Virus record (IMG/VR): IMGVR_UViG_3300042923_000474
Coordinates: 124,001-188,000 of that record
Length of the DNA stretch: 64,000 bases
Strand: one strand, 5' to 3'
Part shown: positions 3,902-60,374 of the stretch, one piece after another
Numbering within the stretch: the first letter of the stretch is position 1
Layout: each line of letters begins with the position of its first letter
The notes under the pieces: model-generated
The model's database searches: none
What the model saw: the letters and a program-made list of their open reading frames with translations, nothing else
What the model was told of the DNA's origin: nothing
Made by a program: the position numbers and the translations under genes

Positions 3902-3964
3902 AGCAACACCCATTGGTCAAAAGTTTCTTAATCATACATTAACTTGAAATCGGTGAAGGGCCTT

Positions 3965-42273: not shown

Positions 42274-42720
42274 ATGACTGTACTTGTCACTTATCAAAGC
42301 GTGTTCGACGCCCAAGCACAAGCGTTGGTCGTCACGGTGAACTGTGTCGGTGTGATGGGTAAAGGGGTTGCAGAGATTTGCAAACGCCGTTATCCGTTGG
42401 TGTTCATCGACTATGTACGCCGGTGTAGAAGTGGCAAGGTTAAACCTGGTCGCATCAGCAACGAGGATTGTTACCAATTACCTGATGGGCGATACATCAT
42501 CCTGTTCCCCACCAAGAATCATTGGCGACGTAATACTGAAGCCTGTTGGGTTGAGACTGGCCTAGCGGATCTTCTGCTCCACTGCCACCGTCTGAGCCTA
42601 GACGACGTGGCACTTCCTCCCCCTGGCTGCGGTAATGGCGGCTTGGAACTGACCGAGGTACAGCCGATGATCGACCTCATGTTTGAGGACGAAGACATTG
42701 AAGTTACCTTATGTATATAG
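42274..42720 (+). CDS. Macrodomain ADP-ribosyl-glycohydrolase (DarG/TARG1-like)
   Basis: VNCVGVMGKGVA, LFPTKNHWR, ALPPPGCGNGGL. Confidence 0.88.
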   Translation: MTVLVTYQSVFDAQAQALVVTVNCVGVMGKGVAEICKRRYPLVFIDYVRRCRSGKVKPGRISNEDCYQLPDGRYIILFPTKNHWRRNTEACWVETGLADLLLHCHRLSLDDVALPPPGCGNGGLELTEVQPMIDLMFEDEDIEVTLCI

Positions 42721-43041: not shown

Positions 43042-43560
43042 ATGAAAATTGATGTGGCCAAAACGGCACAGGAAAACCTGATCGCGCTGATCGTTGCCGC
43101 TAACCCCGGCAAAGAGTTGGCAGCCAATCAGTTCACCGCAGCCGCTCCTGTCGTCATCCCAGACGACGCTGGCCGCAACACCACCATCACTCTGTCCGCT
43201 GTTGTTGGTCAGGGCTACGGTGCTGGTGATGCGACCTTCAAATACACCCGTCTGTCCCTGGCTGGTGTGAACGTTACCCCTGTCACCAGCGTTCGCGTTG
43301 TTGACGGTGATGACGAGGCTGCTACCCTGACCAAAGTGCTCGCTGCTACCGGCATTCTGGCCAGCGAAGTTGATGCGTCGGATTACAACGCACCGACCGA
43401 TGATTCGGTTCCGGGCATGATCACTCTGACCCCGAAAGCAGGTTCCACCCTGTACGTCGGCGAAGAAGTGGTTATCGAACTGACCTGGGCCGCTGAAGCA
43501 GAGCCTACTCTGGGCGAAACCTTCACCGTGACCGATCTGGACGGCTTCGAACCCGCCTAA
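43042..43560 (+). CDS. Virion fibre/decoration paralogue (Y-x-R-x-x-L family)
   Basis: RNTTITL...FKYTRLSL...; C-terminal PTLGETFTVTDLDGFEPA. Confidence 0.75.
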   Translation: MKIDVAKTAQENLIALIVAANPGKELAANQFTAAAPVVIPDDAGRNTTITLSAVVGQGYGAGDATFKYTRLSLAGVNVTPVTSVRVVDGDDEAATLTKVLAATGILASEVDASDYNAPTDDSVPGMITLTPKAGSTLYVGEEVVIELTWAAEAEPTLGETFTVTDLDGFEPA

Positions 43561-43611: not shown

Positions 43612-44292
43612 TCACGCTGGTTCAAACCCGTTAAGGTTCTTGACATCAAACACATCAGCCAAAGTCGGCAGCGACCCCATCGAGACGAAACTACCCGCCA
43701 CGAAGAAGTAGCTGTCCTTGTTGGCAACCAGATAGATCGTGTTGGCTGTAACCTTACACTTGGTCAGGTCAAAGTCAGCATCTTCTACCAGAATGCCTTT
43801 GGCACGGATTGCAGCGATCACCGCAGCAACGTTGGCGTAGTCCTTAGGTACCAGTTTCAGTGCAGCCAACACGTTGATGTAACGACGGTTGTAAACAACT
43901 TGCACCGGTACACGGTAGGCACTGGTTTCTGTGGGGGAGATGGTCACAGTGGTTTGAGCACCGGAGCCATTCGCCACGGGTTTACCAATGGTCAGCGTGT
44001 TCCAGTCTGGCTGCACCGTCATCTTGCGAGCGGTCATGGTCTTGAAGTTATCCAAGCCCGTGATGTCAAACGGCAATGTAACAAAGCCATCAGCCACCTG
44101 GGAAACCAGAACCCGGACACCTTGAAGCTTGGCGAGGGGTATCACGTTCTGGGCAACCAACATCCGCGCTTGGGCAACCCGCACCTGAGGATTGGGCTGT
44201 TCGATCACAATCCCTTGGATCGAGAACAGGTCCGTCCCTATGCGGTCCTTTTCAATGACCACACCTTGCAATGTAAACAGATCAGTATCCAT
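43612..44292 (-). CDS. Virion fibre paralogue with four N-terminal ~17-aa repeats
   Basis: TDLFTLQGVVIE / TDLFSIQGIVIE / VRVAQARMLVAQ / AKLQGVRVLVSQ; YNRR; tail LADVFDVKNLNGFEPA. Confidence 0.75.
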   Translation of the reverse strand: MDTDLFTLQGVVIEKDRIGTDLFSIQGIVIEQPNPQVRVAQARMLVAQNVIPLAKLQGVRVLVSQVADGFVTLPFDITGLDNFKTMTARKMTVQPDWNTLTIGKPVANGSGAQTTVTISPTETSAYRVPVQVVYNRRYINVLAALKLVPKDYANVAAVIAAIRAKGILVEDADFDLTKCKVTANTIYLVANKDSYFFVAGSFVSMGSLPTLADVFDVKNLNGFEPA

Positions 44293-44302
44293 GGCATTCC
44301 CC

Positions 44303-45352
44303 TTAACGTGCTAATACGGTAAGGGAAACCTCTAGCCCAGTAAGGGCTGTGGCAGGAAGGCTCTCATCGTTGGTATGAGAGTTGTTGGCCACAGCCAGTG
44401 CCGGGTTACCCAAAGACACTGTCGGGTTCAGCACCAAGTCACGAGTATCCTCATGCGTGCCTCGCACAACCTTGCCACCGAGGTTGGCAGGAATGCCCTG
44501 AGTATAGGACGCACGACTACGGAGCATGATGCCGTTGACGTTGGACTGAATCGGTAACACGTAGCCGTCCACTGGCTTGAGTTTCAGCACAGCGTTCGCA
44601 CCATTACCCACCACGTATTTACCAGCATCGGCAGCGTGATCCTTCCAACCCAGGACATTGGCAATGTTGGTGACGTCCCAGTTCTGGCTGGACACTACCT
44701 GCATTGGAACATCAGAAATGTCCTGAGGCCCCAAACGCCCGCTAGGAGTATCGTCGCCCATGTCTGCAGTGGCGTAAATGTCGGTGATGTACAAACGCTC
44801 CGTGCCAGAGACTGGGAAGCCTATCTGCCAGGTATTGGCAAGCAGTGCATTCACGTCGGTGCCATTGGTGATGGTGACCGTCACCATGAACCGGCCATCA
44901 ACGTAAACCGATACGGTTCGATCAGTGCGGTTGAACACCATCTCCACGTACCATTCGGTAATCAGCGCTGGCACCGTGTACGACGGATAAACTACAGCCC
45001 CCCGAAATAGAGGGATTGCCAATGCAGCCAAGGCACTGGCCTTGCGCTTGTAGCGAATGCCGATAACGAACGAATTAGCGGCCTGAGGGGTGAGGTGGGC
45101 GATATTCATCGCGAACTGGAAGAAGAGGTTGCTTGCACCGTTACCGGTACCGCCTCCCAACCAATACTTGTTACCCACCTTTTCTACGGCCAGGGCAAAG
45201 CTGTCCTGATAGGGACTCCAACTGGAGCCTGCGGTTATCGCAGGCAGTGCGCCAGGCAAGCCCAAGGACCCAGCGCCAGCAGCGGTAGCGATGCTGGACA
45301 ACTCAATGCCCGTTTGCACTCCGCTGAAGTTTTCGAGTTGTGTAATGGCCAT
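44303..45352 (-). CDS. Virion protein with a ConA/LamG-like beta-sandwich (putative receptor-binding)
   Basis: WYVEMVFN...VSVYVDG, ITDIY...RLGP. Confidence 0.65.
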   Translation of the reverse strand: MAITQLENFSGVQTGIELSSIATAAGAGSLGLPGALPAITAGSSWSPYQDSFALAVEKVGNKYWLGGGTGNGASNLFFQFAMNIAHLTPQAANSFVIGIRYKRKASALAALAIPLFRGAVVYPSYTVPALITEWYVEMVFNRTDRTVSVYVDGRFMVTVTITNGTDVNALLANTWQIGFPVSGTERLYITDIYATADMGDDTPSGRLGPQDISDVPMQVVSSQNWDVTNIANVLGWKDHAADAGKYVVGNGANAVLKLKPVDGYVLPIQSNVNGIMLRSRASYTQGIPANLGGKVVRGTHEDTRDLVLNPTVSLGNPALAVANNSHTNDESLPATALTGLEVSLTVLAR

Positions 45353-46431
45353 TATGCAGGGTCCTTCAGAGTGAGGCTGAAGTCAACCGAAGCCAAGGGC
45401 ACGTTCGCCGCCGCAAACTCGGTACGCGGACGTGTCCAGTTAACGACATCGGCAGTCGTAGTGTTGAAGTTGATGGCGGCAGCGTTGGTGTACTTGGTCC
45501 CATCCACGGTCTGAGAAACATCGACCACCGGAATCACGGTAGCCGCACGTCGACCGCCCATCAGGATACCTGCAGCCAAGACCTTGCCAGTGATACCGGC
45601 CATGTCCAACTTGAAGTTCACCGCACTGTTGGCGTCAGTCAACTTCACTGTACCAGCAGGCTTGGACCATGGACCACCTGAAGCGGTGTTGACCAGTGGT
45701 TGGTTCAAAATGGCCTGGGTAGCAGCAGCATCTTTGTTGGCACCTGCAACACTTGTAACGAGCACAGGAGCACGTTTGATGTTGACAGGACCCAGGCGCT
45801 TGGTGACACCTACGCCATCGTCCACAATAGCGTAAATGTCGCGGACTTTGAACTGGTCAGGACTGACCTTGGCCACACCCGCATTGGTCCACGGCGTGGC
45901 GTTCTTGAACATCACCCCGGTGGTCAGCAGACGGTTGTTGTAGATGTCGTTATAGAGCGGCCCAAAGGTGGTCGACATTACCAACTCCGCCACCAGTATT
46001 CCATCCTTGTAGTAGCGGACACGGTCGGTTGGGAAGTCGATCTCCAGTTCGAGGAAGACCTCCGGCGTACCTGTACCGCCCAGCAGCCCCAAGGACGGGT
46101 GGTTGGTCACCATCGGGTCGTTCAATGCCTGGGTAGACTGAAAGCGAAACAGCCCGTAGCCGGCGTTGTTGACGTTGCGGAAGCGAGCACCGAAGATGTA
46201 GACCTTGTTCTTCTCGAAAGTGAGTGATTGGATAAGTTGGCCACGGTACTCGCCCGCGCCATTGCCTTCCGCACCGCACATCCAACCCGCTTCATCAATG
46301 CAGGGTGGCTGGGTCCAGCTACCCGAGGTGTTATAGATGCCACCCACAATGGGGGCTAGGCCGAAACTCTTGAGATCGGCACCCCCGATAGAGCGCATGT
46401 TGTCAAAACAAAGAGCATACAAGAGACTCAT
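45352..46431 (-). CDS. Virion protein with a ConA/LamG-like beta-sandwich
   Basis: FLELEID...VRYYKDG, VRDIY...RLGP; AAGGAGG RBS before ATG 46431. Confidence 0.65.
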   Translation of the reverse strand: MSLLYALCFDNMRSIGGADLKSFGLAPIVGGIYNTSGSWTQPPCIDEAGWMCGAEGNGAGEYRGQLIQSLTFEKNKVYIFGARFRNVNNAGYGLFRFQSTQALNDPMVTNHPSLGLLGGTGTPEVFLELEIDFPTDRVRYYKDGILVAELVMSTTFGPLYNDIYNNRLLTTGVMFKNATPWTNAGVAKVSPDQFKVRDIYAIVDDGVGVTKRLGPVNIKRAPVLVTSVAGANKDAAATQAILNQPLVNTASGGPWSKPAGTVKLTDANSAVNFKLDMAGITGKVLAAGILMGGRRAATVIPVVDVSQTVDGTKYTNAAAINFNTTTADVVNWTRPRTEFAAANVPLASVDFSLTLKDPA

Positions 46432-46441
46432 GGTACCCTCC

Positions 46442-47533
46442 TTACACGGAACCAAGACTGAGAGAGGTAAAGACCGTCGACAGAGCAGGCTTGCGGCCCA
46501 CTGTGAGCGTGTAGGTACCCTTGAAGAGTGGAGAGGTAGCCTTTGCCTGCAGTGTCAACGTAAACGTCGTCAGGCTGTCCTGAGCCACTACAGGGAGGTC
46601 TTCCAGATCGTAGATCGTGAACGGGATGCCGGTGATCGCATTGATCGTTGGCAGAATGTGGTGAACCGTGGTGTCCTCCAAAACCTTGACAGTTGTGGGA
46701 AACGTGAAAGCCGCCATGCCTGACAAATCAACACGGTTGTAGAACACATTCTTACTGATCGTACTCTGCCCATCCACGCTCGGGTAAGTCACGCCGCGCT
46801 TGATCTCACGAATACTGGATGGACCGGTATTGAGCGATGCACTGTCGGCAAAGGTTACCGAGGCAGGTGTCAGGGTGCGGCCCAAGATAGTTCCCAATTG
46901 GGTCACAAAGGCCGCTTTGGCAAAGTACGCGGGCAGTGCAGCCAACGTAGCTGGCCAGGACAACCCCACAAGCTCCCAATCGCGGTCTGAGGGGCACATC
47001 CACCCAACGTTGACCTGAGTCCCCGGTTGGAAGTACAAAGAGTTCTCAGAGGCTTCCAGGGTGCATGGGCCATCTTGGGGGATGGGTGTACTCTTAAAGT
47101 CCGAAGCACTCAGTGCCGTACCGAAGGTAGCATTGAATCGTGGGATCACCTGATCGGTTGTGGTCATGACCTTGTCGTACTTCAGGGTATCGAGGTTACG
47201 ATCCCGGACGATCTCCTTTAAAGGGAATCGGTAGTAGGCAAAGTCCAACGAACCACGGTAACCCGAGCTGGGCTTGAAAGTCACCGGCAGTTTGGCATTG
47301 AACCGATCTTTGACAGCAGCCGATGGCACACCGAATGTCAGGTCAGCCAAGACGAAGCTTTTCTGCCACGTCGAGTTGATCGAGTTAACGATGTGCTGAT
47401 TGACTTCTACTGTGAATGGATCTGTGGGGGGAGAGGACAAGACCGCGTAAGCCGCGATCTGATCCAGTTTCAACAACGCGGGTTGCTGTAAAACAGCATA
47501 CGCCGCAATCTGATCAACTTTTACAGTTGCCAT
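46442..47533 (-). CDS. Virion fibre paralogue with two family domains and two N-terminal repeats
   Basis: KVDQIAAYAVL and KLDQIAAYAVL; YYRFPL and YNRVDL domains. Confidence 0.75.
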   Translation of the reverse strand: MATVKVDQIAAYAVLQQPALLKLDQIAAYAVLSSPPTDPFTVEVNQHIVNSINSTWQKSFVLADLTFGVPSAAVKDRFNAKLPVTFKPSSGYRGSLDFAYYRFPLKEIVRDRNLDTLKYDKVMTTTDQVIPRFNATFGTALSASDFKSTPIPQDGPCTLEASENSLYFQPGTQVNVGWMCPSDRDWELVGLSWPATLAALPAYFAKAAFVTQLGTILGRTLTPASVTFADSASLNTGPSSIREIKRGVTYPSVDGQSTISKNVFYNRVDLSGMAAFTFPTTVKVLEDTTVHHILPTINAITGIPFTIYDLEDLPVVAQDSLTTFTLTLQAKATSPLFKGTYTLTVGRKPALSTVFTSLSLGSV

Positions 47534-47544
47534 CGACGTTCACC

Positions 47545-48678
47545 TTAGAGAGCGGCCGCCAACTTGACGGTGTATTTATCAAGTTCCGTTTTGGCAGGGG
47601 TGGCAGCAATCGACTTGAACGCCATGCGACGCGCCAGACCAGTGGCCTGAAGTGCACGGGTGTAGTCGAACGTTTGCTGGAAGGTTGCCGTTTGGCTCTG
47701 GTCACTAGCACCGCTCTTGAGCAGGTCCAGCTTCAGGTTGGACGAGCCACTGGTAGCCAGCGCGTCTACCTGAACCATCAATGCCTTCACAGTATCCGTG
47801 TCGCTGATACCCGCAGTATCGAGGGTGACCACACCACTGGCATCGTTGTCGGTGACAGACACCGTGGTTGGTGTACCGACAGCCGCGTTGAAAGTGGCGT
47901 GTGCGTCGTTCAGGGATTCGACAACAGTCTTGCCTGCCACGTCGGGCGTCCATGTGGGGGCATTGACGGCTTTGACCGGAAGGGACTTAAGACGCACAGG
48001 GCCAACCTTCTTGACCATATCGTTGGCTGCAATCTCGGACAGGAGAATGTCTTTGAAGGCATCGTCACGATACAGCTCAGCGTAACCGCCACCGTTCGTG
48101 GTCTGAACACCCACCCAGAACGCAACCAGCTTAACCCCAGATGCGGCTAGGCGGGCGGAGATGGACAGGGTTTTCAGGTAGACGTTGTCGCGATAAACGG
48201 TGACTTCGCCGGTGACACGATCCACGGTGATCTCAAAATAGTGACCAGTGCCGACTGTGTTTGGTGTGGCCCAGTCTGCCGCCATCACAATGGAAAGTGG
48301 GGCCAACGAATCAGAAAGACGCAGACCAGCACTTGAGACCAGTGCGCCAGAGGTTCGAGCCTCGTGGGTCACACGAAAACCGAACGACAGCATCGAGGTG
48401 CCAGCCTGCAGCCCGGCTTCAGCGTTTTCCAACATGGCCTCAACGGTGGCCAAGTAGGTGCCGCCAGAGTAGTTGGACAGATTACGGGCACGTACCACCA
48501 ATGCATCTGGGTCGGTGCCTTTGCGGATGCCAAAGGTTGGACCAGTAGGCGCGTAGGCGTAAGGGTCGGTATACCCCACCGTCATTCGACTGCCTTCGAT
48601 CTGACCAACATAAGGGGTGTTGGTGTTGAAGAGACCGGTGGGGGCCTTGGTAAAACCGTAGGCTTCAATAATGCGCAT
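47545..48678 (-). CDS. Virion protein with a ConA/LamG-like beta-sandwich
   Basis: HYFEITVD...VTVYRDN, FKDIL...KVGP. Confidence 0.65.
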   Translation of the reverse strand: MRIIEAYGFTKAPTGLFNTNTPYVGQIEGSRMTVGYTDPYAYAPTGPTFGIRKGTDPDALVVRARNLSNYSGGTYLATVEAMLENAEAGLQAGTSMLSFGFRVTHEARTSGALVSSAGLRLSDSLAPLSIVMAADWATPNTVGTGHYFEITVDRVTGEVTVYRDNVYLKTLSISARLAASGVKLVAFWVGVQTTNGGGYAELYRDDAFKDILLSEIAANDMVKKVGPVRLKSLPVKAVNAPTWTPDVAGKTVVESLNDAHATFNAAVGTPTTVSVTDNDASGVVTLDTAGISDTDTVKALMVQVDALATSGSSNLKLDLLKSGASDQSQTATFQQTFDYTRALQATGLARRMAFKSIAATPAKTELDKYTVKLAAAL

Positions 48679-48693
48679 GCTGAACTCCTAGGC

Positions 48694-49017
48694 TTATCGG
48701 CCGTAGTGCATGTACAAGCGGCGGCTGTCCTGACCTTCCAGATCCTGAAGGCGGATACCCACCACACGCTTGAACAAAGGGTTGGTCGGCAACATGTCGT
48801 CGTTATCACCTACATAGATGATCTCGGCGCCTTCGAGGGAGGTCAGGTCGGTACCGGTGGTAACCCACTTGCCCTGATCCTCGGTGGGGTCGTACTGACC
48901 CAGTGCGGCCGACAGCGTTGTAAGTTTGTCTTCCGGGATGGGGCCTAACTCCAGCTCATTCAAGAATTCCTCGAATGGGGCGAAGTCAACGCGGAAGAAG
49001 TTGGGCAAAGTTTGCAT
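48694..49017 (-). CDS. Stand-alone C-terminal domain of the fibre family
   Basis: LPTNPLFKRVV...RLYMHYG matches the C-termini of ORFs in 49525-54720. Confidence 0.7.
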   Translation of the reverse strand: MQTLPNFFRVDFAPFEEFLNELELGPIPEDKLTTLSAALGQYDPTEDQGKWVTTGTDLTSLEGAEIIYVGDNDDMLPTNPLFKRVVGIRLQDLEGQDSRRLYMHYGR

Positions 49018-49019
49018 GG

Positions 49020-49517
49020 TTAACTCCAGTCGAAGTAGGGTTCGGGAATGGCTGCAGAGATCGACGGAATACCGCCACTGAACAACGTGCAGCTACCTTT
49101 CCAGAAGATACCCGTAGATTTGGCGGTCAATGGGATTTTGAATGTCCCGTCACCGTTATCGATCAGGGCCGCATCTTCCACATCGTCGGCATCAAACAAC
49201 ACGCCAAACGTTTTGAGGATGTAGGGGAAGCAGTCGTAAACACGGGCTGCGCCTGTCAGTACATTGGTCTGAGCAGTGCCCGCACTGGCGCCCAAGACGG
49301 CCAAGTCCACACGGTTGTACTTAAACGACCGGTAGTCCTTATACGTTGGGTTGGTCCCTGTTGCCGTGAGTTTGATTTTGGTGTCAAACCCTTCTGGATC
49401 ATTGGCCAGCGCCGAGGGCGGCGAGAGGGTCCAGAGGTTGGCAGCAGAATAAGCGAGGGCATGATTGGCCTGCAGCTGAATAAGCAGGCTGATCTTGGAA
49501 CCTTGTTTTAAGTCCAT
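49020..49517 (-). CDS. Virion fibre paralogue
   Basis: DTKIKL...FKYNRVDL. Confidence 0.75.
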   Translation of the reverse strand: MDLKQGSKISLLIQLQANHALAYSAANLWTLSPPSALANDPEGFDTKIKLTATGTNPTYKDYRSFKYNRVDLAVLGASAGTAQTNVLTGAARVYDCFPYILKTFGVLFDADDVEDAALIDNGDGTFKIPLTAKSTGIFWKGSCTLFSGGIPSISAAIPEPYFDWS

Positions 49518-49524
49518 GGCTCAC

Positions 49525-50418
49525 CTACACCTTGTAGTGAAGCAAGAATTTACCCACGAACCAACCACCCGCCGCAGGTGGAGTAATGACCACCACATTG
49601 TTGTAGTCTGTGGAGTTTGCCTCGGGCACGTTTACGTTGGGTAGGGCATACTTGATGCAGCGAGCATCTTGCAGGCCACCCTCAGTCGCAGCCGGAACAT
49701 AAGCGTTGAGCTTACGGCCAGCCACCAGGCTCATGTACGACACCAAGTCTTTCGCCTGCGCAGTGCTGGGCAAAACCTGAAGCGTGGTCAAAGACTGCAG
49801 CAGTGCACTGAACTTGGAGAAGTCCGTCCCATAGGTCATGAAGTCGGCCATGGGTTTCGGGTTACCGCCCGGCGCTACTCCACTAACCAAGGTCAGCAGG
49901 AGCGGGGTGGTGGCAGGCACCTGTTCAGACACAGGCTTTTTGGTAGCCTTGCGGTTCCAGCGAAAAGACCCAATCCACGCGGGGTTGTTAGTCGGGAAGT
50001 TCCAAATGTAGCCGGTTTGCACCGTATTGGGAACCACTGCACGGTCCGAGTCCGAGGCGATGAACTTGGTGCCATACTTCTGGTTGATCCAGCGCATCGC
50101 CGATTCAATCTTGACGTTGACGCCGGTCAAGTCGTCAGGCGTGGCGTAGTCGTCGATTACCGGTACGCCTTGTTGGAACAAGACATCCGAAGACAGACGA
50201 CGGTAGGTGAGCACGGTGGTGGCCATGTAGCCGGAACCGGTACGAGGCATCACCGAAATTTGTGTGTTGCGAATCCCCTGACCAGTGATCGCTGCCGGAA
50301 CACCCAAACGACAGTTATCTGGCGTGAGTTTGTACGGCAGCTGAGGATTGTCCCGATTGATCAAATCAAAGACCAATTCGGCAGATGTTTTTCGATAGTC
50401 TAAGTCCATCTTCTTCAT
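49525..50418 (-). CDS. Virion fibre paralogue (two-domain)
   Basis: LINRDNP, RNT, TYRRL; VPEAN...GKFLLHY. Confidence 0.75.
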   Translation of the reverse strand: MKKMDLDYRKTSAELVFDLINRDNPQLPYKLTPDNCRLGVPAAITGQGIRNTQISVMPRTGSGYMATTVLTYRRLSSDVLFQQGVPVIDDYATPDDLTGVNVKIESAMRWINQKYGTKFIASDSDRAVVPNTVQTGYIWNFPTNNPAWIGSFRWNRKATKKPVSEQVPATTPLLLTLVSGVAPGGNPKPMADFMTYGTDFSKFSALLQSLTTLQVLPSTAQAKDLVSYMSLVAGRKLNAYVPAATEGGLQDARCIKYALPNVNVPEANSTDYNNVVVITPPAAGGWFVGKFLLHYKV

Positions 50419-50459
50419 CCCAGTTGGAAGGGGCCGGGGAGTACCCGGCCACTATGCCG

Positions 50460-51344
50460 TCAGTCCGCCGAGTTCGGGTTATCCGGGTCGTTGAAGTGCA
50501 GGTAGAAGCGACCAGTGGGTGTGGTCACGCCGGTACGCAGCTCCAAGCACATCACGTACTTGTACGACTGGTTGGTGGGGAAGACCATGGTGTTCAGACC
50601 GCAGAAGATCACTTTGGCGCCGTTGAGCGACCAGGTGTTGCTGCTGTCGGAGTTGTTCCACAGTGTGGCGCCAGGACCCTGATCGAGTGCCTTAAGGGCC
50701 GTCACCAGGATGTCAGCATTGGCGGAAGACAGTACGCCTTCGGCCATGGCCAGCAATTGGTCACGGTAACCTGTCAGGTTCAGCGGGTAGGCGTACAGCA
50801 GTGCCGAGGTCTGAGTCGCCGGATCGGCCACTGGGTAGTTCAAACCATTCAACGCCTTGACCGTGGTCAGGGTGTCGATGTTTGCACCACCTTGAACGAC
50901 ATCAAAGGACAACTGACCCAGCCACAGAGGCGAAGCGTCCTTGGCCTTGATGGTCACGGTACCGGCACCTTGGCCATCCAGCACCACAGGCTCGCTGAGA
51001 ATATCCTGCGGACCCAGCACGAGGCCGAAGTAGTACAGGATGTTCGACAACAGGTCGATGGTCGTTGCAGGTTGGTAAACCGGCAGAGGGCGGGTAGGAC
51101 GGAACTTGGCGAAGTCTGCCAACTTCAAGCGATCGTATTTAACGGTCGCCTTACCTTCGAAACCAGCGCCTTGTTTCGGCGTTACCTTGGCGTAGGTGTT
51201 TTTGGTGGTAGTACCCTCCATCCACGTCCCGGCGATCGGCTTGGGATCGGACCAGGTGAGGTTGGCTGCAGTGAACTGCGTGGTACTGTTGGCCGCATTC
51301 AAATAGTTGAAGAGGGCCTGCTTGGAATCTACGAAAACAGACAT
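50460..51344 (-). CDS. Virion fibre paralogue (two-domain)
   Basis: KNT, KYDRLKL, LNGLNYP; GRFYLHFN. Confidence 0.75.
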   Translation of the reverse strand: MSVFVDSKQALFNYLNAANSTTQFTAANLTWSDPKPIAGTWMEGTTTKNTYAKVTPKQGAGFEGKATVKYDRLKLADFAKFRPTRPLPVYQPATTIDLLSNILYYFGLVLGPQDILSEPVVLDGQGAGTVTIKAKDASPLWLGQLSFDVVQGGANIDTLTTVKALNGLNYPVADPATQTSALLYAYPLNLTGYRDQLLAMAEGVLSSANADILVTALKALDQGPGATLWNNSDSSNTWSLNGAKVIFCGLNTMVFPTNQSYKYVMCLELRTGVTTPTGRFYLHFNDPDNPNSAD

Positions 51345-51356
51345 GGCTGCCTCCTC

Positions 51357-52244
51357 TTAAAGGTTGAAGTACAGAATCCACTTGCCTGCGAGGCGTGGGT
51401 TGCTGGCGTCGGTGACCGTGAGGATCTTCGCGTAGGCAAAACCTGGCTTGTTCGCCTCGGGGTGTATGGCGCTCGGTAGCGCCACCGCGGAGAACGTGCC
51501 GTTGGACATGTTCCACGGAGCTGTATCGGCATTGTAGGTGCCCACAGCAATCGGCCAACCCGTCAAGCGAGTGATCTCGGCAATTACGCCGCCCTGACCA
51601 CTGAGGACAACCGTGTTGCTAGCGGTCCAGCCTTGGGCCAGTGCGAACTCAGTGAAGTCCAGACCTGCAAAGACAAACTCAGGACGCAGACTGCGATCTG
51701 GCTTGGCCACGAAGTCGTTACCGCCTGGCCATTGGGCGCCATCCAGTTCAGTCACGGTCAGAATGTCGATACCGACTTGCTGCAGGCCACGGTTCCAGGT
51801 GACGGTGAAGCTACCCACGTAGGCCAGGTTATCGGCAGTGGCCGTCCAAACGCGTGCGGCACCGCTGTTGGTAGAGTTCCAGACGCTGCCCGTGATGCCG
51901 GACACTGTCAGGTTCACGCCGTACAGTTGGTTGACGTAACCGATGGCCTGGGCCAGGGTCATGGAGGCGCCATCGTTCAGCCAGCGAGTGAATGCGATGT
52001 TGTTACCACGGAACAGGCTGGTCAGATCGCGGCGACGATACAGAACTTCCAGCACGCCTCGGTACTTGCTGGAGGACTTGGCCGTGATCTTGAGCTTGGT
52101 ATTGCGACCGAAACTGTCAGCGGCAACAACCACGGGTTTACCGAAGATGAAGTCGGTGGTATTGATGGGCCATGGCAGCGTCGGGTTATCCGCGTTGATC
52201 TGCGCGATGGCCTCTTCGAGAGGACTGCCTGTGAGAATTGGCAT
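51357..52244 (-). CDS. Virion fibre paralogue (two-domain)
   Basis: INADNP, RNT, YRRRDL; PEAN...GKWILYFN. Confidence 0.75.
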   Translation of the reverse strand: MPILTGSPLEEAIAQINADNPTLPWPINTTDFIFGKPVVVAADSFGRNTKLKITAKSSSKYRGVLEVLYRRRDLTSLFRGNNIAFTRWLNDGASMTLAQAIGYVNQLYGVNLTVSGITGSVWNSTNSGAARVWTATADNLAYVGSFTVTWNRGLQQVGIDILTVTELDGAQWPGGNDFVAKPDRSLRPEFVFAGLDFTEFALAQGWTASNTVVLSGQGGVIAEITRLTGWPIAVGTYNADTAPWNMSNGTFSAVALPSAIHPEANKPGFAYAKILTVTDASNPRLAGKWILYFNL

Positions 52245-52254
52245 GTGCTTTTAC

Positions 52255-53022
52255 CTAGGCTGGATTGTAGTGGAAGTACATGGCGCCTTGTAAAAGGCCG
52301 CTCTGCACAGTCGACTGAATAACGACGCGTTTGAACACAGGGTTGGCATCAGGTACTTCTGCCGTTGCCTTGTCCACAACTTTGCCTTTAACCCAGTCAG
52401 GGATACCCATGGCACGAGTCACTGTTTGAACGAGCGCCCAATCGGAATACTCGCCCTTGGCAGTTGGCTTCAATGCATCCTGGATACCAGAGAAGTCCGC
52501 ACCCCACGTCCACATCCGGCTGGATTGTCGGTTGGTATTGTTGGGGTGTTTGAAGATGTCCAGATCGGTCTTGCCAATCATCGAGTCCAGCCACGAGGGA
52601 CCGAACGACAGATTGAGGTCCAGACCACCGAACCACTGCAACGAGGTCTCTGCAATCTCGATGCGCGAAGAGATCGCCTCACCATCACCCAGCACAGGTG
52701 GGGTGTACTCTTCGAAGTCTTCGGGGTTGATGTCGAGGCCAAACTTGTTAGCCAGGCCCAGCACAATCATTTCACGGTTCATGGCTTCCAGAGAACGGAA
52801 GTCAAAAGACGTCACGTAGTCTGCCAGATTCATGCGGTCATAGTAGACATCGACCTCACCGTAGTAACCGCGCCCCGGAATACCGGAGATGGTCACCAGT
52901 GTGTTGCGGTCGTGCTCTGTGGTCGGTTGGGGTACCGAGAACGAGAGCCGCTTTTCCGTGAACTCCTTGGGTGGAGTGAACATGTCGTTTAGAACGACAA
53001 ACATCCGTTCGGCGTTAGCCAT
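52255..53022 (-). CDS. Virion fibre paralogue (two-domain)
   Basis: RNT, YYDRMNL; VPDANP...GAMYFHYN. Confidence 0.75.
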   Translation of the reverse strand: MANAERMFVVLNDMFTPPKEFTEKRLSFSVPQPTTEHDRNTLVTISGIPGRGYYGEVDVYYDRMNLADYVTSFDFRSLEAMNREMIVLGLANKFGLDINPEDFEEYTPPVLGDGEAISSRIEIAETSLQWFGGLDLNLSFGPSWLDSMIGKTDLDIFKHPNNTNRQSSRMWTWGADFSGIQDALKPTAKGEYSDWALVQTVTRAMGIPDWVKGKVVDKATAEVPDANPVFKRVVIQSTVQSGLLQGAMYFHYNPA

Positions 53023-53032
53023 GGTTCACCCC

Positions 53033-53875
53033 CTATGCCAGGTCTGGATCGGGTTCATTGAAGTGAAGCGTCAGCTCACCTGTCAGACCCAAGCAGTTGG
53101 CATCCACCAGCATGACCTTAATGAAGCGGTCGTACTTCGGGTTGGCTTCATTCGGATGCTCGGCGGAAATACCCACCATGCGAATCGTTGCACCGGCCAG
53201 ACTGAAACGGCTGATGCCTTCGATCTTCCAATCGTCACCTGTCTGCGTTTTAAGCAGAGGACCCAACACGTTCACCGGGGCATCACCCACCACGATGTCC
53301 TTGAGCTGCTCGTAGGAGGTCGTGAAGTCACGCCAGTACGAATAGATCTGGGCATACGGTCGAGTGGTGGTCGCCGATGGGTAGCGCAGACCGTTGAGAC
53401 GGGTCACCTTGAGGTAGTCCGCCAACTGGTAGCCACCCGGACGGGTACCCACCGAAACAGTGCCAGTCCATGCCAAGCTGGTAGGCAGTGCCTCCAACTC
53501 AACCACGCCGCCTTGAGCTTTCTCTTCGTCAGTCAGCGCACGGATCAGTACATCTTTATCCGTGAGCAGTGTGCCGTAGCGTTTGTTCATGGCCGCAATG
53601 ATGTCACTGGTGCTTTGCGGTTCTTTGACCGGCACCAACAAGGTCACTTGCGCAGCCAAGTCGGACAATGGGTTGCGATGGTAGCGGAACGTCTCGGAAC
53701 CGGAGTACGCTGTCTCTTGGTTTTTGGCAGTGAGCACGATCGTCGTATTGAACTGCCCTACCGGAGTAATCGCGATAGGTGCTTCGAAGATGTATTCACT
53801 GGCCACCAAGTCAAGCTTGTTCAGCCGGTTGATCGATTCCACCATCACATCCAAAGAGGGTTTATAAAGCGACAT
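53033..53875 (-). CDS. Virion fibre paralogue (two-domain)
   Basis: FNT, YHRNPL, LNGLRYP; EANPKY...GELTLHFN. Confidence 0.75.
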   Translation of the reverse strand: MSLYKPSLDVMVESINRLNKLDLVASEYIFEAPIAITPVGQFNTTIVLTAKNQETAYSGSETFRYHRNPLSDLAAQVTLLVPVKEPQSTSDIIAAMNKRYGTLLTDKDVLIRALTDEEKAQGGVVELEALPTSLAWTGTVSVGTRPGGYQLADYLKVTRLNGLRYPSATTTRPYAQIYSYWRDFTTSYEQLKDIVVGDAPVNVLGPLLKTQTGDDWKIEGISRFSLAGATIRMVGISAEHPNEANPKYDRFIKVMLVDANCLGLTGELTLHFNEPDPDLA

Positions 53876-53886
53876 AATCGTGCCCT

Positions 53887-54720
53887 TTAGGAAGTGAGGT
53901 TATAGTGGAAGTAGGCGATACCCGAGTAGTCCATGGTTTGCACGTTGGCAATATCCTTGATCACCTGAACAAGCACTCGATCGTAGTCCTTGTTAGCTTC
54001 CGGTACCTGCGCCGTACTGTAGTCGAACATGGGGTTGTTCCATGCCACGGGCCAGTTCGAGTAACCGAACGAAGCCATCAGTGTCCGCATGGCGTTCCCG
54101 TCGTTAACGATGTTGTAGAACGGGTGCTTGCGAACTTTGGCGTAATGTTCCGACCAGTCTTCACTGTAAGTGAACAACGTGATCGGTCGCTTGTTCAGCG
54201 TGTCCAGCGTTTGACCCGGATGCAACATGACATCGAGATCACGCATGACGACAACCTCAGACAGCAGAGGACGACGTCGGGTAAAGCGAATAACAAACTG
54301 GCCGATGTAGGACAATGAAGTGGTAAGGGCTACGAGGGGGATGTTGACCTCTTCGTTTTCGCCCAACCAGCTGTAGTCAACCTGCTCGAAGTCATCGACA
54401 TCCAACTGGATGCCCAACTCTTGGCCGATATACGGCAACATCGAATGCAGGTTTCCGTTACTCAGCCCATTGATCCGGGGACGGATATCACCAAACGCGC
54501 TTGTAAGGTCCATCCGCTCGTACTCAACGGGGACCATGCCTTCATAGGTCGTATCGGGAATCGGCACAACGACACTACGGACCAGGGTAGGTAGGGGACC
54601 CTGGACAAACTTAGGCGTGGTAAAAAGCACATCGTCCGGGTTCAACGGGGAGGGAAGGACATTCTGCTGATTGATGAGATCAACTAAAACGTCCCTGCCC
54701 TTTCCAGGGACAAGGATCAT
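53887..54720 (-). CDS. Virion fibre paralogue (two-domain)
   Basis: AGGAG RBS before ATG 54720; YERMDL; VPEANKDY...GIAYFHYN. Confidence 0.75.
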   Translation of the reverse strand: MILVPGKGRDVLVDLINQQNVLPSPLNPDDVLFTTPKFVQGPLPTLVRSVVVPIPDTTYEGMVPVEYERMDLTSAFGDIRPRINGLSNGNLHSMLPYIGQELGIQLDVDDFEQVDYSWLGENEEVNIPLVALTTSLSYIGQFVIRFTRRRPLLSEVVVMRDLDVMLHPGQTLDTLNKRPITLFTYSEDWSEHYAKVRKHPFYNIVNDGNAMRTLMASFGYSNWPVAWNNPMFDYSTAQVPEANKDYDRVLVQVIKDIANVQTMDYSGIAYFHYNLTS

Positions 54721-54880
54721 TTTTCTCTCCTGAAACCGTGATCTGAAGGGAAGGAATGTGTGCCGGATAGGAAACATTCACATAGGATTAGCCCTTGCTG
54801 AAATAAGATAGGTAAGGGCATAAAAGAGAGTGGCCTTTCGGCCACTCCCAGTGAGTCCCTTCGTTCACGCACGTCAGGTC

Positions 54881-55444
54881 TTACTCGGCCGGCGGGGTTG
54901 CCGGAGGAGTTGGGTAGTTCAGACCAGACAGAGTGGTCACGGTGATCACGTCGGACAATGGGATGTCTTCAGCGGTCAAGGTCACGCTCAGGGATTCCAG
55001 GAAGACGTAGGAGTCTGCGTCAGCCGGGATCTGGATGATCTTGGTTTCGTTGGGAGTACCTTCCCAATCACCGATGTCGCCGTCGATGTAGTCGTCGGCG
55101 GTCAGGTTGATGCCGAGTGCAGTGTTGATCTCGTCGATCAGGTCTGCGAACTTGGCAGCGTCACCTACCGGGATCTCCAGCGCGCCAGTGATGCCAGCGG
55201 CGGCGATGAAGCCGTCGAGAGCCAGGCGGTTGTAGTTCACGGCCACTTCACCGGTATAACCGGAGTTAGGCAGAGCCGACACTTCCAACGTGGTGTTGGC
55301 CACTGGGTTCTGACCAGTAGCGGCTTGAGGCACGCCCAGACCCATTACGGTGCTGGAGATGGTCTTGCCAGGGTTGTCGAAGTTGATGAGATCGAAAATG
55401 ATCTCTTTTGGAGCTTTCTTGAAGTCACTGACATGGAGGGCCAT
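54881..55444 (-). CDS. Virion fibre/decoration paralogue (single domain, own terminator)
   Basis: LINFDNP, ANT, YNRLAL, PLSDVITVTTLSGLNYP; hairpin-TTTTATGCCC at 54816-54849 on the minus strand. Confidence 0.78.
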   Translation of the reverse strand: MALHVSDFKKAPKEIIFDLINFDNPGKTISSTVMGLGVPQAATGQNPVANTTLEVSALPNSGYTGEVAVNYNRLALDGFIAAAGITGALEIPVGDAAKFADLIDEINTALGINLTADDYIDGDIGDWEGTPNETKIIQIPADADSYVFLESLSVTLTAEDIPLSDVITVTTLSGLNYPTPPATPPAE

Positions 55445-55541
55445 GGGGACACCTTTTGGTTGCTGCGTGATGGAAAAAGGCCCCTTAGTAAAGGACCACA
55501 TATCATAGTAAAGTTATAGACGACCGCCTAGGGGCATTTAA

Positions 55542-59775: not shown

Positions 59776-60288
59776 TTATGCCGTCTGTGGGTAGTTCAAG
59801 CCACCCAGACTTGTGACGCGTATTACTTCAGACAGTGGGATCAGTTGGGGTTTGATCACTTCTGCCAGAATCTGACCTTTGTAGAAGAGTGAGTCGGGAC
59901 TTGCTTGGAGCATAACCATTGCTTCACCGTCGGTCCACTCAATGGGGCCATCGAGCAGGTCGTCGGTTTCCACGTTGAACCCGTACTTAAGTTGCAGTAA
60001 GGGAATCAGTTGGTGGATGGTTTGAGCGTAGGCTTCTAGTTCCAACGTATCCAGATTGATCTGTGAGAACAACCATTCCAGATCCAACTTATCAAAGGTT
60101 GAGACAACACTACCCGTCCAACGCTTTTGATCTAGCGATGTAATGGTAACGGCGGTATCACCCACCATGTCTGGGTTGTCGTTGATCCTGGGATCGCCTA
60201 CATACAGCAGGTCGTAGGGAATCTCATAGTCACTCGCTACAAAGATCAAGTCGAGCAGAATTTCCTTTTGGGGCCTTAATGTCGACAT
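59776..60288 (-). CDS. Isolated virion fibre-family paralogue
   Basis: [31 protein letters not shown] (close to the 54881 ORF); GAGGA RBS before ATG 60288. Confidence 0.72.
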
Positions 60289-60374
60289 GCGTGTATCCTC
60301 TGTGTGCGCATACCATTCTTCAACTCCCACACCCTAGGGACAATCTATCAGACCACTCAATCTCTGGAGCCACT

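What the first reader, a model, noticed from the sequence alone, without database searches (positions are those of the whole stretch)
43612..48678. Possible docking code: adaptor N-terminal repeat pairs match the number of upstream lectin-like genes
Seen, in transcription order: lectin-like 47545 -> adaptor 46442 (one repeat pair, K[V/L]DQIAAYAVL x2) -> lectin-like 45352 -> lectin-like 44303 -> adaptor 43612 (two different pairs: TDLF.[L/I]QG.VIE x2, then VRVAQARMLVAQ / AKLQGVRVLVSQ). All repeats are ~17-aa spaced beta-strand-like peptides centred on a Gln. That gives three lectin-like genes and three distinct repeat pairs. Inference: each pair is a donor strand that completes the C-terminal beta-sandwich of its cognate lectin protein, giving a modular, swappable adhesin display on virion fibres.
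Basis: inference. Interest (0 to 1): 0.7.

Follow-up and report, generated by a model that had tools for sequence, protein, structure and literature searches.

The report
Peptide-repeat docks for phage lectin subunits
In this giant (phiKZ-like) phage, the two fibre proteins encoded just after lectin-like genes start with strictly 17-residue-spaced peptide repeats; in all 17 comparable fibre genes of the other loci examined (related metagenomic phage contigs and Burkholderia phage FLC9) such repeats occur only in that position, so they are probably the pegs that hang separate sugar-binding subunits on the virion's fibres, though binding itself is not shown.

Summary
The window lies in a complete 231.7 kb phiKZ-like jumbo phage. 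Three paralogous two-domain lectin-like genes alternate with two DUF7941 fibre proteins. The N-termini of those two proteins carry 2 and 2+2 peptide repeats at exactly 17-residue spacing, the two best such repeats in the whole genome.

In 13 non-redundant loci, all 17 DUF7941 genes directly downstream of a lectin gene have the repeat extension. None of about 109 others truly does. One relative gained a third lectin gene and a third repeat pair together. Copies of a pair differ at synonymous sites, so the peptide is under selection.

The strict rule of one pair per lectin gene is not general. Counter-examples are 3 lectins with 1 pair, 3 with 2 pairs, 6 with 8 repeats, 2 with 8 and 1 with 1.

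The donor-strand mechanism is untested. An AlphaFold2 monomer of one lectin folds completely, and the single complex job gave no verdict.

Best reading: the repeats are class-specific docking peptides that recruit separate lectin subunits onto DUF7941 baseplate fibres, with repeat copy number setting valency. This looks like a new, undescribed variant of modular receptor-binding-protein attachment. It is testable in cultured phages FLC9 and RTH11.

The parts
47545..48678 (-). lec1: lectin-like two-domain protein, 377 aa, class 'a'
   Evidence: Member of the lectin family profile (E 1.7e-62). Weak phrog_2448 hit. Paralogue of lec2 and lec3.
46442..47533 (-). Adaptor 1: DUF7941 protein, 363 aa. 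It has an N-terminal repeat region followed by two DUF7941 N-type modules.
   Evidence: PF25613 E 1.3e-27; phrog_1037 and phrog_2935 'virion structural protein'. Orthologues P0008-P0011.
47432..47533 (-). Adaptor 1 repeat region (residues 1-34): two 17-aa units with cores KVDQIAAYAVL (47489-47521) and KLDQIAAYAVL (47438-47470)
   Evidence: Translation. Ten of 11 residues are identical, but 7 of the 11 core codons differ at synonymous sites. Conserved in L001, L002, L006, L009 and L011; a single unit in L004 and L007.
45352..46431 (-). lec2: lectin-like protein, 359 aa, class 'b1'
   Evidence: Family profile E 9.4e-64. Orthologues support the ATG at 46431. Its stop overlaps the lec3 start by 1 nt.
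44303..45352 (-). lec3: lectin-like protein, 349 aa, class 'b2'. N-terminal ConA-like jelly roll (about residues 1-210) plus a C-terminal beta domain (about 215-349).
   Evidence: AF2 model with mean pLDDT 85.9 and pTM 0.87. VIA-align Z 8-10 to GH131, CBM and sialidase lectin-like jelly rolls over residues 1 to about 210. Foldseek hits to ConA-like folds. Whole-length matches to phage proteins in BFVD.
43612..44292 (-). Adaptor 2: 226 aa. It has an N-terminal repeat region, a DUF7941 N-type module and a C-terminal linker motif ...NLNGFEPA.
   Evidence: PF25613 22 bits (below the 27-bit cut-off), phrog_1037 E 1.3e-5. Own-genome DUF7941 search E 1e-5. Orthologues P0002-P0007.
44086..44292 (-). 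Adaptor 2 repeat region (residues 1-69): four 17-aa units. Pair B is TDLFTLQGVVIE (44251-44286) and TDLFSIQGIVIE (44200-44235). Pair C is VRVAQARMLVAQ (44149-44184) and AKLQGVRVLVSQ (44098-44133).
   Evidence: Translation. The 2+2 layout is kept in orthologues down to 40% identity, and the two copies of a pair co-vary.
48694..49017 (-). 107-aa protein just upstream of lec1: probably a stand-alone DUF7941 C-terminal domain
   Evidence: Conserved at this position in all relatives and in FLC9 gp317 (A8). It ends in RLYxHYN, like the C-termini of the full-length paralogues. Its orthologues in L022 and L023 carry a PF25613 hit.
49020..49517 (-). 165-aa DUF7941 protein with the N-terminal module only
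   Evidence: PF25613 E 5e-16.
49525..55501 (-). Array of seven further DUF7941 paralogues without N-terminal repeats. Six are full-length (255-297 aa); the seventh is a 206-aa protein with the N-type module only.
   Evidence: PF25613 hits. No repeat extension in any of them. Gaps of 7-41 nt, and no terminator-like site above chance until 54826-54849.
43042..43560 (+). Convergent 172-aa DUF7941 N-module protein. It ends in the same linker motif (TDLDGFEPA) as adaptor 2.
   Evidence: PF25613 E 1.7e-12. Conserved at this position in L001, L002, L004, L006, L009 and L011.

Best explanation
The window encodes the host-recognition fibre module of a phiKZ-like (Chimalliviridae-type) jumbo phage. DUF7941 proteins build baseplate-attached filaments by head-to-tail docking; this rests on the literature.

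Two of them, adaptor 1 and adaptor 2, carry an N-terminal array of 17-residue units. I infer that each unit is a short docking peptide for a separately encoded lectin-like protein. That protein has an N-terminal ConA-like jelly roll, which is the likely glycan- or receptor-facing part, and a C-terminal beta domain, which is the likely attachment part.

Units come in sequence classes. A class recruits one class of lectin: here the adaptor 1 pair would hold lec1, and pairs B and C would hold lec3 and lec2, with the order not settled. The number of copies of a class is two here and 1 to 5 elsewhere, and would set how many lectin subunits are held. Paralogous lectins of one class may compete for the same units. 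The loaded adaptor would then enter the DUF7941 filament network through its DUF7941 module and C-terminal linker motif.

Shown: the repeats, their selection, the lectin fold and the genomic association. Inferred: physical binding, its specificity, the docking surface and virion location.
For: (1) Exclusive association. In 13 non-redundant loci, 17 of 17 DUF7941 ORFs directly downstream of a lectin gene have the N-terminal repeat extension. The 106 others have none. Three further flags are start-codon artefacts, and one of those is in fact downstream of a lectin gene.

(2) Joint gain. L006 has a third lectin gene before adaptor 2 and a third repeat pair (DLRHITGYSVT / DLRQVVGYTVV). That lectin's nearest relatives are FLC9 lectins, and the new pair resembles FLC9 gp310 units VLRQVSAFTLQ.

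(3) The same lectin classes recur with the same unit classes in different genomes. Examples are MLRA.IGFD lectins with SVRNA.G.AL units in L020 and L021, and MA.RAII and MAIT..G.EHLP lectins with LRD..VY.IT and ..GG[YF] units in L020 and L022.

(4) The number of units rises with the number of upstream lectin genes: Spearman 0.79 over 20 modules, not corrected for phylogeny.

(5) Selection on the peptide. Copies are identical in protein but differ at most synonymous sites, and the two copies of a pair co-vary between phages.

(6) The period is exactly 17 residues in every relative, up to 8 units.

(7) lec3 folds as a ConA-like jelly roll plus a C-terminal beta domain. Within lectin classes the C-domain is more conserved than the N-domain in 61 of 64 pairs, but not between classes. 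That is the pattern of a conserved attachment domain and a variable receptor domain.

(8) Operon-like packing: gaps of -1 to 15 nt and no terminator-like site above chance.

(9) DUF7941 proteins form filaments, sit at the peripheral baseplate, and in Goslar are sometimes fused to carbohydrate-binding domains (phiKZ gp127). Goslar, which has the fusions, lacks this lectin family.
Against: - There is no direct evidence of binding. The only complex prediction allowed gave no verdict, and no interface is known.
- Counts do not match everywhere. L011 has 3 lectins for one pair and 3 for two pairs. FLC9 has 6 lectins for 8 units.
- Class counts depend on how units are clustered. By eye they equal lectin genes in 17 of 20 modules. 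By a crude automatic clustering they do so in 11 of 20.
- Lectin genes and adaptors are inherited as a cassette, so association alone does not prove contact.
- A strict 17-residue period is also what a self-folding structural repeat would show.
- That the lectins are virion proteins rests on names of look-alike clusters, not on proteomics of this phage.
Confidence: 0.5

Rival explanations
1. Each pair of repeats is a pair of donor strands that completes an incomplete C-terminal beta-sandwich of one cognate lectin, with exactly one pair per lectin gene.
For: In this phage and its closest relatives, three pairs match three lectins. L006 adds a lectin and a pair together. The C-terminal domain is the conserved half within each lectin class.
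Against: Units occur singly (L007, L020), in threes (L022) and in interleaved sets of 5+3 (L023). Pairs are not always adjacent: FLC9 units 3 and 6 flank units 4 and 5. L011 has three lectins per pair. AlphaFold2 predicts lec3 alone with pLDDT above 90 through most of the C-terminal domain, with seven strands, so no missing strand is apparent. This is weak evidence, because such models can look complete anyway.
Confidence: 0.15
2. The repeats are a self-contained structural element of the adaptor, such as a beta-solenoid or beta-meander stalk or an oligomerisation region. They would space or stiffen the N-terminus or dock the adaptor to the baseplate or to other DUF7941 proteins. The lectins would bind elsewhere, or would be linked to the adaptor only as a co-inherited cassette.
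For: The exact 17-residue period, the conserved linker Pro and the alternating hydrophobic pattern are typical of structural repeats. Unit number is not tightly tied to lectin number in L011, L023 and FLC9. DUF7941 proteins are already proposed to interact through linker peptides.
Against: The repeats occur only next to lectin genes, never in the about 106 other DUF7941 paralogues that also must join the filaments. Distinct unit classes persist and co-vary pairwise instead of homogenising. A lectin and a matching unit class were gained together.
Confidence: 0.22
3. The lectin-like proteins are not virion components. They would be assembly factors or chaperones for the neighbouring adaptors, or the module would have a non-adsorption role. 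The repeats would then be chaperone-recognition or regulatory segments.
For: There is no proteomic evidence for this phage. Phage fibre genes often sit next to dedicated chaperone genes (general knowledge). phrog_2448 has no assigned function.
Against: The nearest Atlas cluster and a BFVD look-alike are named 'virion structural protein'. The fold is that of carbohydrate-binding jelly rolls. FLC9 homologues carry long extra C-terminal domains (567-1156 aa), which is unlike chaperones. A fast-evolving N-domain suits a receptor-facing role.
Confidence: 0.08
4. The repeats are recent tandem duplications or chance similarity without function.
For: None beyond their short length.
Against: They are the top two of 897 genome segments. 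Synonymous divergence sits alongside protein identity. The layout is conserved down to 40% identity and across distinct phage clades.
Confidence: 0.02

Closest known systems
DUF7941 (PF25613) filament proteins of Chimalliviridae: Goslar gp22/gp23, gp86/gp92/gp161; phiKZ gp126/gp127 (bioRxiv 10.64898/2026.04.21.720040; PMC13250141)
   Same: The same domain family is arrayed as many paralogues. It is proposed to form baseplate-attached filaments by head-to-tail docking of a linker to the next N-terminal domain. The proposed role is host recognition. Some members lack the C-terminal domain, like adaptor 2 and the 172-aa protein here.
   Different: In Goslar the carbohydrate-binding, hydrolase or LRR domains are fused to the DUF7941 module. 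Here the lectin-like units are separate genes, and the neighbouring DUF7941 proteins carry N-terminal 17-residue repeats. Neither paper mentions such repeats. Goslar has no member of this lectin family.
Cohesin-dockerin scaffoldins of cellulosomes (analogy from general knowledge)
   Same: One scaffold chain carries tandem docking sites of distinct specificity classes. These recruit separately encoded carbohydrate-active subunits, and the copy number of sites sets the stoichiometry.
   Different: Cohesins and dockerins are folded domains of about 70-150 residues with calcium sites. Here the scaffold sites would be 17-residue peptides. There is no sequence or fold relation. This is an analogy of logic only and was not tested.
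Donor-strand complementation/exchange in chaperone-usher pili (Fim, Pap; general knowledge)
   Same: A short N-terminal extension with alternating hydrophobic residues is proposed to pair as a beta-strand with a partner subunit.
   Different: Pilins have one extension and an Ig fold that lacks its last strand. Here there are arrays of 1-8 units on one chain, and the partner is predicted to fold completely on its own. No homology.
Branched or adaptor-mediated attachment of several receptor-binding proteins in phages (CBA120 tailspikes, G7C gp63.1/gp66, lactococcal BppU-BppL; general knowledge)
   Same: Several different receptor-binding proteins are mounted on one virion through a dedicated adaptor encoded next to them.
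   Different: Those systems use folded adaptor domains, usually trimeric, not tandem short peptides. The proteins are unrelated in sequence.
Concanavalin A-like lectin/glucanase jelly rolls (LamG, CBM4/22/40, GH131, calreticulin lectin domain)
   Same: Residues 1 to about 210 of lec3 superpose with Z 8-10 on many members. The Atlas lists a Laminin_G_3 cluster among its neighbours.
   Different: There is no Pfam match. The only PDB sequence hit is E 0.02 to a lectin-like jelly-roll subdomain. Sugar-binding residues are not identified. The second, C-terminal domain has no named counterpart.

Membership tests
DUF7941 (PF25613) Chimalliviridae filament proteins | Match to the Pfam model above its gathering score | tested here: met
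   Adaptor 1 scores 97.4 bits against a cut-off of 27. There are thirteen hits in the genome, all inside the window. Adaptor 2 alone scores 22.2 bits, below the cut-off. It is supported by phrog_1037 (E 1.3e-5), by the in-house profile and by Pfam-positive positional counterparts, the adaptor-2 genes of L020, L021 and L022.
DUF7941 (PF25613) Chimalliviridae filament proteins | Head-to-tail oligomerisation into filaments; location at the peripheral baseplate | not testable with these tools
   Known only from the Goslar preprint and the phiKZ map. There are no virion data for this phage.
Chimalliviridae / phiKZ-like jumbo phages | Multisubunit virion RNA polymerase, phiKZ-type sheath, PF12699 inner-body protein, DUF7941 | tested here: met
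   phrog_3148 RNAP beta with E 0, phrog_3242 sheath. Sheath relatives are all jumbo phages. PF12699 E 1.2e-38. Chimallin itself was not searched for.
ConA-like lectin/glucanase fold | Two-sheet jelly roll superposable on known members | tested here: met
   AF2 model with pLDDT 86. VIA-align Z up to 10.2 over 150-190 residues. Foldseek probability 1.0 to the legume-lectin domain 7elv and to calreticulin. Z of 8-10 is only moderately above background.
ConA-like lectin/glucanase fold | Carbohydrate binding | not testable with these tools
   No conserved sugar-binding motif was identified. 'Lectin-like' describes the fold, not a shown activity.
Donor-strand complementation systems | The acceptor domain lacks a strand and cannot fold alone | tested here: inconclusive
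   The AF2 monomer shows a confident seven-stranded C-terminal domain. A predicted model cannot prove completeness.
Donor-strand complementation systems | The peptide is inserted as a strand into the partner's sheet | tested here: inconclusive
   The complex prediction returned no verdict and no interface.

The most novel reading that the evidence does not exclude
A peptide 'barcode' scaffold. Tandem 17-residue units at the N-terminus of a fibre protein would act as class-specific sockets, each holding one separately encoded lectin subunit. A phage could then change what its fibres bind, and with what valency, by swapping lectin genes and short peptide units. The same lectin fold, next to a protein with 17-residue N-terminal repeats, also appears in Chi-like siphophages that lack DUF7941. 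The system may therefore be an old and widespread way of mounting receptor-binding subunits.
Probability: 0.35. Interest if true: 0.78.

Novelty: new variant of a known kind. Interest (0 to 1): 0.62.

Why it matters
DUF7941 filaments were proposed only in 2026 as a 'fibre cloud' for host recognition by nucleus-forming jumbo phages. How they acquire specificity is open wherever no binding domain is fused to them.

If the 17-residue units are docking sites, this module explains that gap. It gives a simple sequence rule for predicting which lectin sits on which fibre. It also points to a compact, exchangeable attachment system, a short peptide plus a cognate domain. That system could be studied in laboratory phage-host pairs and might serve as a protein-assembly tool.

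The question is directly testable, because two cultured phages carry the same arrangement: Burkholderia phage FLC9 and Xanthomonas phage RTH11.

Tried and rejected
- Complex prediction of lec2 + lec3 + adaptor 2 residues 1-80, each with its own alignment: the verdict was 'no answer'. The control in which lec2 was replaced scored as high as the real complex, so the job is evidence neither for nor against binding.
- First AF2 model of lec3 with 11 sequences: pLDDT 60, too poor. It was redone with 116 sequences.
- megablast and tblastn of the region and of lec1 and adaptor 1 against GenBank phages: no match. P0018 also gave none.
With the adaptor 2 alignment it found only two IMG/VR relatives.
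- Lectin profile search in Xoo-sp14, pEa_SNUABM_54, Eowyn and pPa_SNUABM_DT01: no members. None in Goslar either.
- Idea that the repeats mimic the lectin's own N-terminal strand in a cognate-specific way: mean best 9-mer score was 12.9 for cognate, 11.8 for non-cognate and 10.4 for an internal control. That is too weak to use, though single cases are striking, such as L006 MTIRKIVGF against VDLRQVVGY.
- Colinearity between lectin gene order and repeat order: the cases are inconsistent (L006 against L020 and L022), so it was dropped.
- Automatic clustering of units into classes at one BLOSUM threshold: unstable. It merges all units in FLC9 and L023 and splits pair C of this phage. Class counts are therefore given as judgement, not measurement.
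- PDB sequence searches with the lectin profile, the adaptor 2 profile and three Q29 proteins: no solved relatives.
- Sigma-70 promoter and terminator scan: nothing above chance inside the module.

Full report
**Where the window lies.**
The window is bases 124001-188000 of a complete, terminally redundant 231.7 kb virus genome. It encodes a phiKZ-type RNA polymerase beta subunit, tail sheath, terminase and virion proteins. Its sheath is related only to jumbo phages of Xanthomonas, Erwinia, Klebsiella, Pseudomonas, Burkholderia and Vibrio, at 31-38% identity. The genome also has a PF12699 'phiKZ inner body' protein. It is therefore a phiKZ-like (Chimalliviridae-type) jumbo phage with no close cultured relative.

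**Checking the observation.**
On the minus strand, tightly packed with gaps of -1 to 15 nt, lie five genes:
- lec1, 47545-48678.
- Adaptor 1, 46442-47533.
- lec2, 45352-46431.
- lec3, 44303-45352.
- Adaptor 2, 43612-44292.

Adaptor 1 starts with two units, KVDQIAAYAVL and KLDQIAAYAVL. Adaptor 2 starts with four: TDLFTLQGVVIE, TDLFSIQGIVIE, VRVAQARMLVAQ and AKLQGVRVLVSQ. All sit at exactly 17-residue spacing, and the coordinates were verified by translation.

In a six-frame scan of the whole genome (897 segments), these two proteins rank first and second for 17-residue-spaced self-similarity.

The copies are not recent DNA duplicates. In adaptor 1 the two cores are identical at 10 of 11 residues, yet 7 of the 11 codons differ at synonymous positions. 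The same holds in relatives.

**What the proteins are.**
Both adaptors belong to DUF7941 (PF25613). Adaptor 1 matches clearly. Adaptor 2 falls just below the Pfam cut-off but is supported by PHROG 1037 and by its relatives. All thirteen DUF7941 hits of the genome lie in this window, as a minus-strand array running from 55.5 kb down to 43.6 kb. One convergent gene (43042-43560) and one outlier (59776-60330) complete the set.

A 2026 preprint on phage Goslar identifies DUF7941 as a Chimalliviridae-specific family present in hundreds to thousands of copies per virion. It shows filaments of purified gp22. It proposes head-to-tail docking of one protomer's linker and C-terminal domain onto the next N-terminal domain. 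It also notes three members fused to carbohydrate-binding, hydrolase or LRR domains. In the phiKZ virion map, the DUF7941 protein gp127 sits at the end of the gp139 band in the outer peripheral baseplate.

Adaptor 2 and the convergent 172-aa protein both end in a ...L(N/D)GFEPA motif. It resembles the mid-protein linker of the full-length paralogues. The 107-aa protein upstream of lec1 ends like the DUF7941 C-terminal domain.

The three 'lectin-like' proteins are distant paralogues of one another, and they are the only members of their family in the genome. The family is wide: 282 clusters at 50% identity, mostly 330-390 aa.

With 116 sequences, AlphaFold2 gives a confident model of lec3, with mean pLDDT 86 and pTM 0.87. 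Residues 1 to about 210 form a ConA-like jelly roll. VIA-align gives Z 8-10 to GH131, Cip1, CBM4, CBM22 and CBM40, sialidase lectin domains and a mycobacteriophage baseplate protein. Foldseek matches legume-lectin and calreticulin domains. Residues of about 215-349 form a second, seven-stranded beta domain.

'Lectin-like' is thus right as a statement about fold. Sugar binding is not shown.

**Testing the link between repeats and lectin genes.**
I collected relatives from IMG/VR, Logan and ENA contigs and from GenBank phages.

*Presence and absence.* Across 13 non-redundant loci, 17 of 17 DUF7941 ORFs directly downstream of a lectin gene carry an N-terminal repeat extension. The 106 others carry none. 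Three extra flags were start-codon artefacts, and one of them actually lies downstream of a lectin gene. The repeats are therefore a property of lectin-adjacent adaptors, not of DUF7941 proteins in general.

*Natural variants.*
- L006 has three lectin genes before adaptor 2 and three pairs.
  - The extra lectin's nearest relatives are the FLC9 lectins.
  - The extra pair (DLRQVVGYTVV) resembles FLC9 units (VLRQVSAFTLQ).
- L004 and L007 have lec1 followed by an adaptor with a single unit.
- In a second clade (L020-L023), the same lectin types recur with the same unit types in different genomes.

*Counts.* Unit number rises with lectin gene number: Spearman 0.79 over 20 modules, not corrected for shared ancestry.

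- L011 has three class-a lectins but one pair, and three class-b lectins but two pairs.
- FLC9 has six lectin genes followed by gp310 with eight units, which by eye fall into four classes in the order 1,1,2,3,3,2,4,4.
- L023 has two lectins and eight units, in two interleaved classes.
- RTH11 has one lectin and four units.

By eye, unit classes equal lectin genes in 17 of 20 modules. A crude automatic clustering gives only 11 of 20, so I treat class counts as judgement.

The safest statement has three parts. The repeats occur only with lectin genes. Their classes track lectin classes. Copy number per class varies from 1 to 5. 'One pair per lectin gene' is a local state of this phage and its closest relatives.

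**Mechanism.**
The most economical reading is that each 17-residue unit is a docking peptide for one lectin subunit. Unit class would give specificity, and unit number would give valency. Paralogous lectins of one class, as in L011 and FLC9, would compete for the same units.

Three observations fit this:
- Strong purifying selection on the peptides.
- Pairwise co-variation of the copies between phages.
- The conservation pattern of the lectins.
  - Within each class, the C-terminal domain is more conserved than the jelly roll in 61 of 64 pairs.
  - Between classes it is not.
  - This is as expected if the C-domain is the class-specific attachment domain and the jelly roll faces a variable receptor.

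The specific donor-strand idea has no support yet. The lectin is predicted to fold completely on its own. The one complex job I could run gave no verdict (see Tried and rejected).

The main rival is that the repeats are a self-folding structural stalk or an anchor to other virion parts, linked to the lectins only by cassette inheritance. The strict period fits that reading. The exclusive association, the persistent classes and the joint gain in L006 fit it less well.

**Comparison with what is known.**
The nearest known system is the DUF7941 'fibre cloud', and membership of the adaptors in that family is met. The difference is that here the binding modules are separate polypeptides, and the adaptors carry repeat arrays. 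The two structural papers do not mention this, and a full-text search for DUF7941 finds nothing else relevant.

In logic the system resembles a cellulosome scaffoldin, with tandem type-specific sockets for separate subunits. It also resembles branched receptor-binding-protein adaptors of other phages. In possible mechanism it resembles beta-strand augmentation or donor-strand complementation. None of these is a homologue.

I rate it a new variant of a known kind, namely modular attachment of receptor-binding subunits.

**Wider reach (a lead only).**
The whole two-domain lectin fold matches 330-370 aa proteins of many non-jumbo phages in BFVD, with TM 0.5-0.67. tblastn with two family members hits Chi-like siphophages.

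In Proteus phage Q29, three lectin-family genes (E 1e-31 to 5e-17) lie beside a 665-aa protein. Its N-terminus has units RAVVYQIL, RNVLYQVS and RNVVYQIS at 17-residue spacing. No DUF7941 is detected in the ORFs tested there.

If this is the same system, it predates and is independent of DUF7941.

**Verdict.**
Confidence that the repeats dock the lectins is about 0.5. Interest is moderate to high, because the feature is conserved, undescribed and directly testable in cultured phages.

Noticed in passing
L025 (Proteus phage Q29, OM962992) 2245-4242 minus strand; lectin genes 5827-6894 (+), 6895-7890 (+), 7901-8827 (-): A Chi-like siphophage without DUF7941 has three lectin-family genes next to a 665-aa protein. 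That protein's N-terminus carries 3-5 units at 17-residue spacing (TSRAVVYQIL, THRNVLYQVS, QHRNVVYQIS ...). The lectin-plus-repeat pairing may be wider than jumbo phages. None of these proteins has a solved relative.
   Followed up: partly
window 48694-49017 (-) and 49020-49517 (-): A DUF7941 protein appears split into two genes here. The 165-aa protein is the N-terminal module plus linker. The 107-aa protein ends in RLYMHYGR, like the C-terminal domain of the full-length paralogues. The pair is conserved in every relative and in FLC9 (gp318/gp317), always just before the first lectin gene.
   Followed up: partly
window 46442-47533 versus L004 142-1512, L006 5476-6914, L009 9134-10563, L011 9155-10605: Adaptor 1 is a single 363-aa gene in this phage, L001 and L002. 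In other relatives it is two genes: a 288-317 aa protein with its own C-terminal domain, plus a 162-164 aa protein that matches the second half of adaptor 1. This is a gene fusion or fission with loss of a C-terminal domain.
   Followed up: no
window 43612-44292 C-terminus; L006 10163-11023; L009 12664-13401: The C-terminal motif ...F.V..L.GFEPA of adaptor 2 is duplicated in tandem in L006 and L009. The same motif also ends the convergent 172-aa DUF7941 protein (43042-43560). It is probably the linker peptide used for head-to-tail docking.
   Followed up: no
L017 (Xanthomonas phage RTH11, OQ790161) 10593-11439: The RTH11 adaptor seems broken into three ORFs: a 92-aa repeat part plus 122-aa and 65-aa DUF7941 pieces. 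The tail sheath of the same record is annotated in three pieces. This suggests frameshift errors in that assembly rather than real gene splits.
   Followed up: no
L005 (Burkholderia phage FLC9) gp311, gp312, gp313: The profile match begins upstream of the annotated GTG/ATG starts of these three lectin genes. The open frames are 358, 729 (with one TAA) and 376 aa, so the deposited starts are probably too far downstream.
   Followed up: no
window 2-3913 (-), near its C-terminus: The 1304-aa tail-fibre-like protein (phrog_3201) has a short 13-residue-spaced repeat, LRGKLGRIPGV / LGGMLSRIPGV. It ranked third in the window repeat scan.
   Followed up: no
window 42274-42720 (+) and its counterparts in the loci of relatives: In relatives, the gene at this position carries a Pfam Macro domain hit (PF01661). 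The window's own ORF aligns by eye with the L001 counterpart but was not scanned. It lies just beyond the convergent end of the fibre module in the window and in all close relatives.
   Followed up: no
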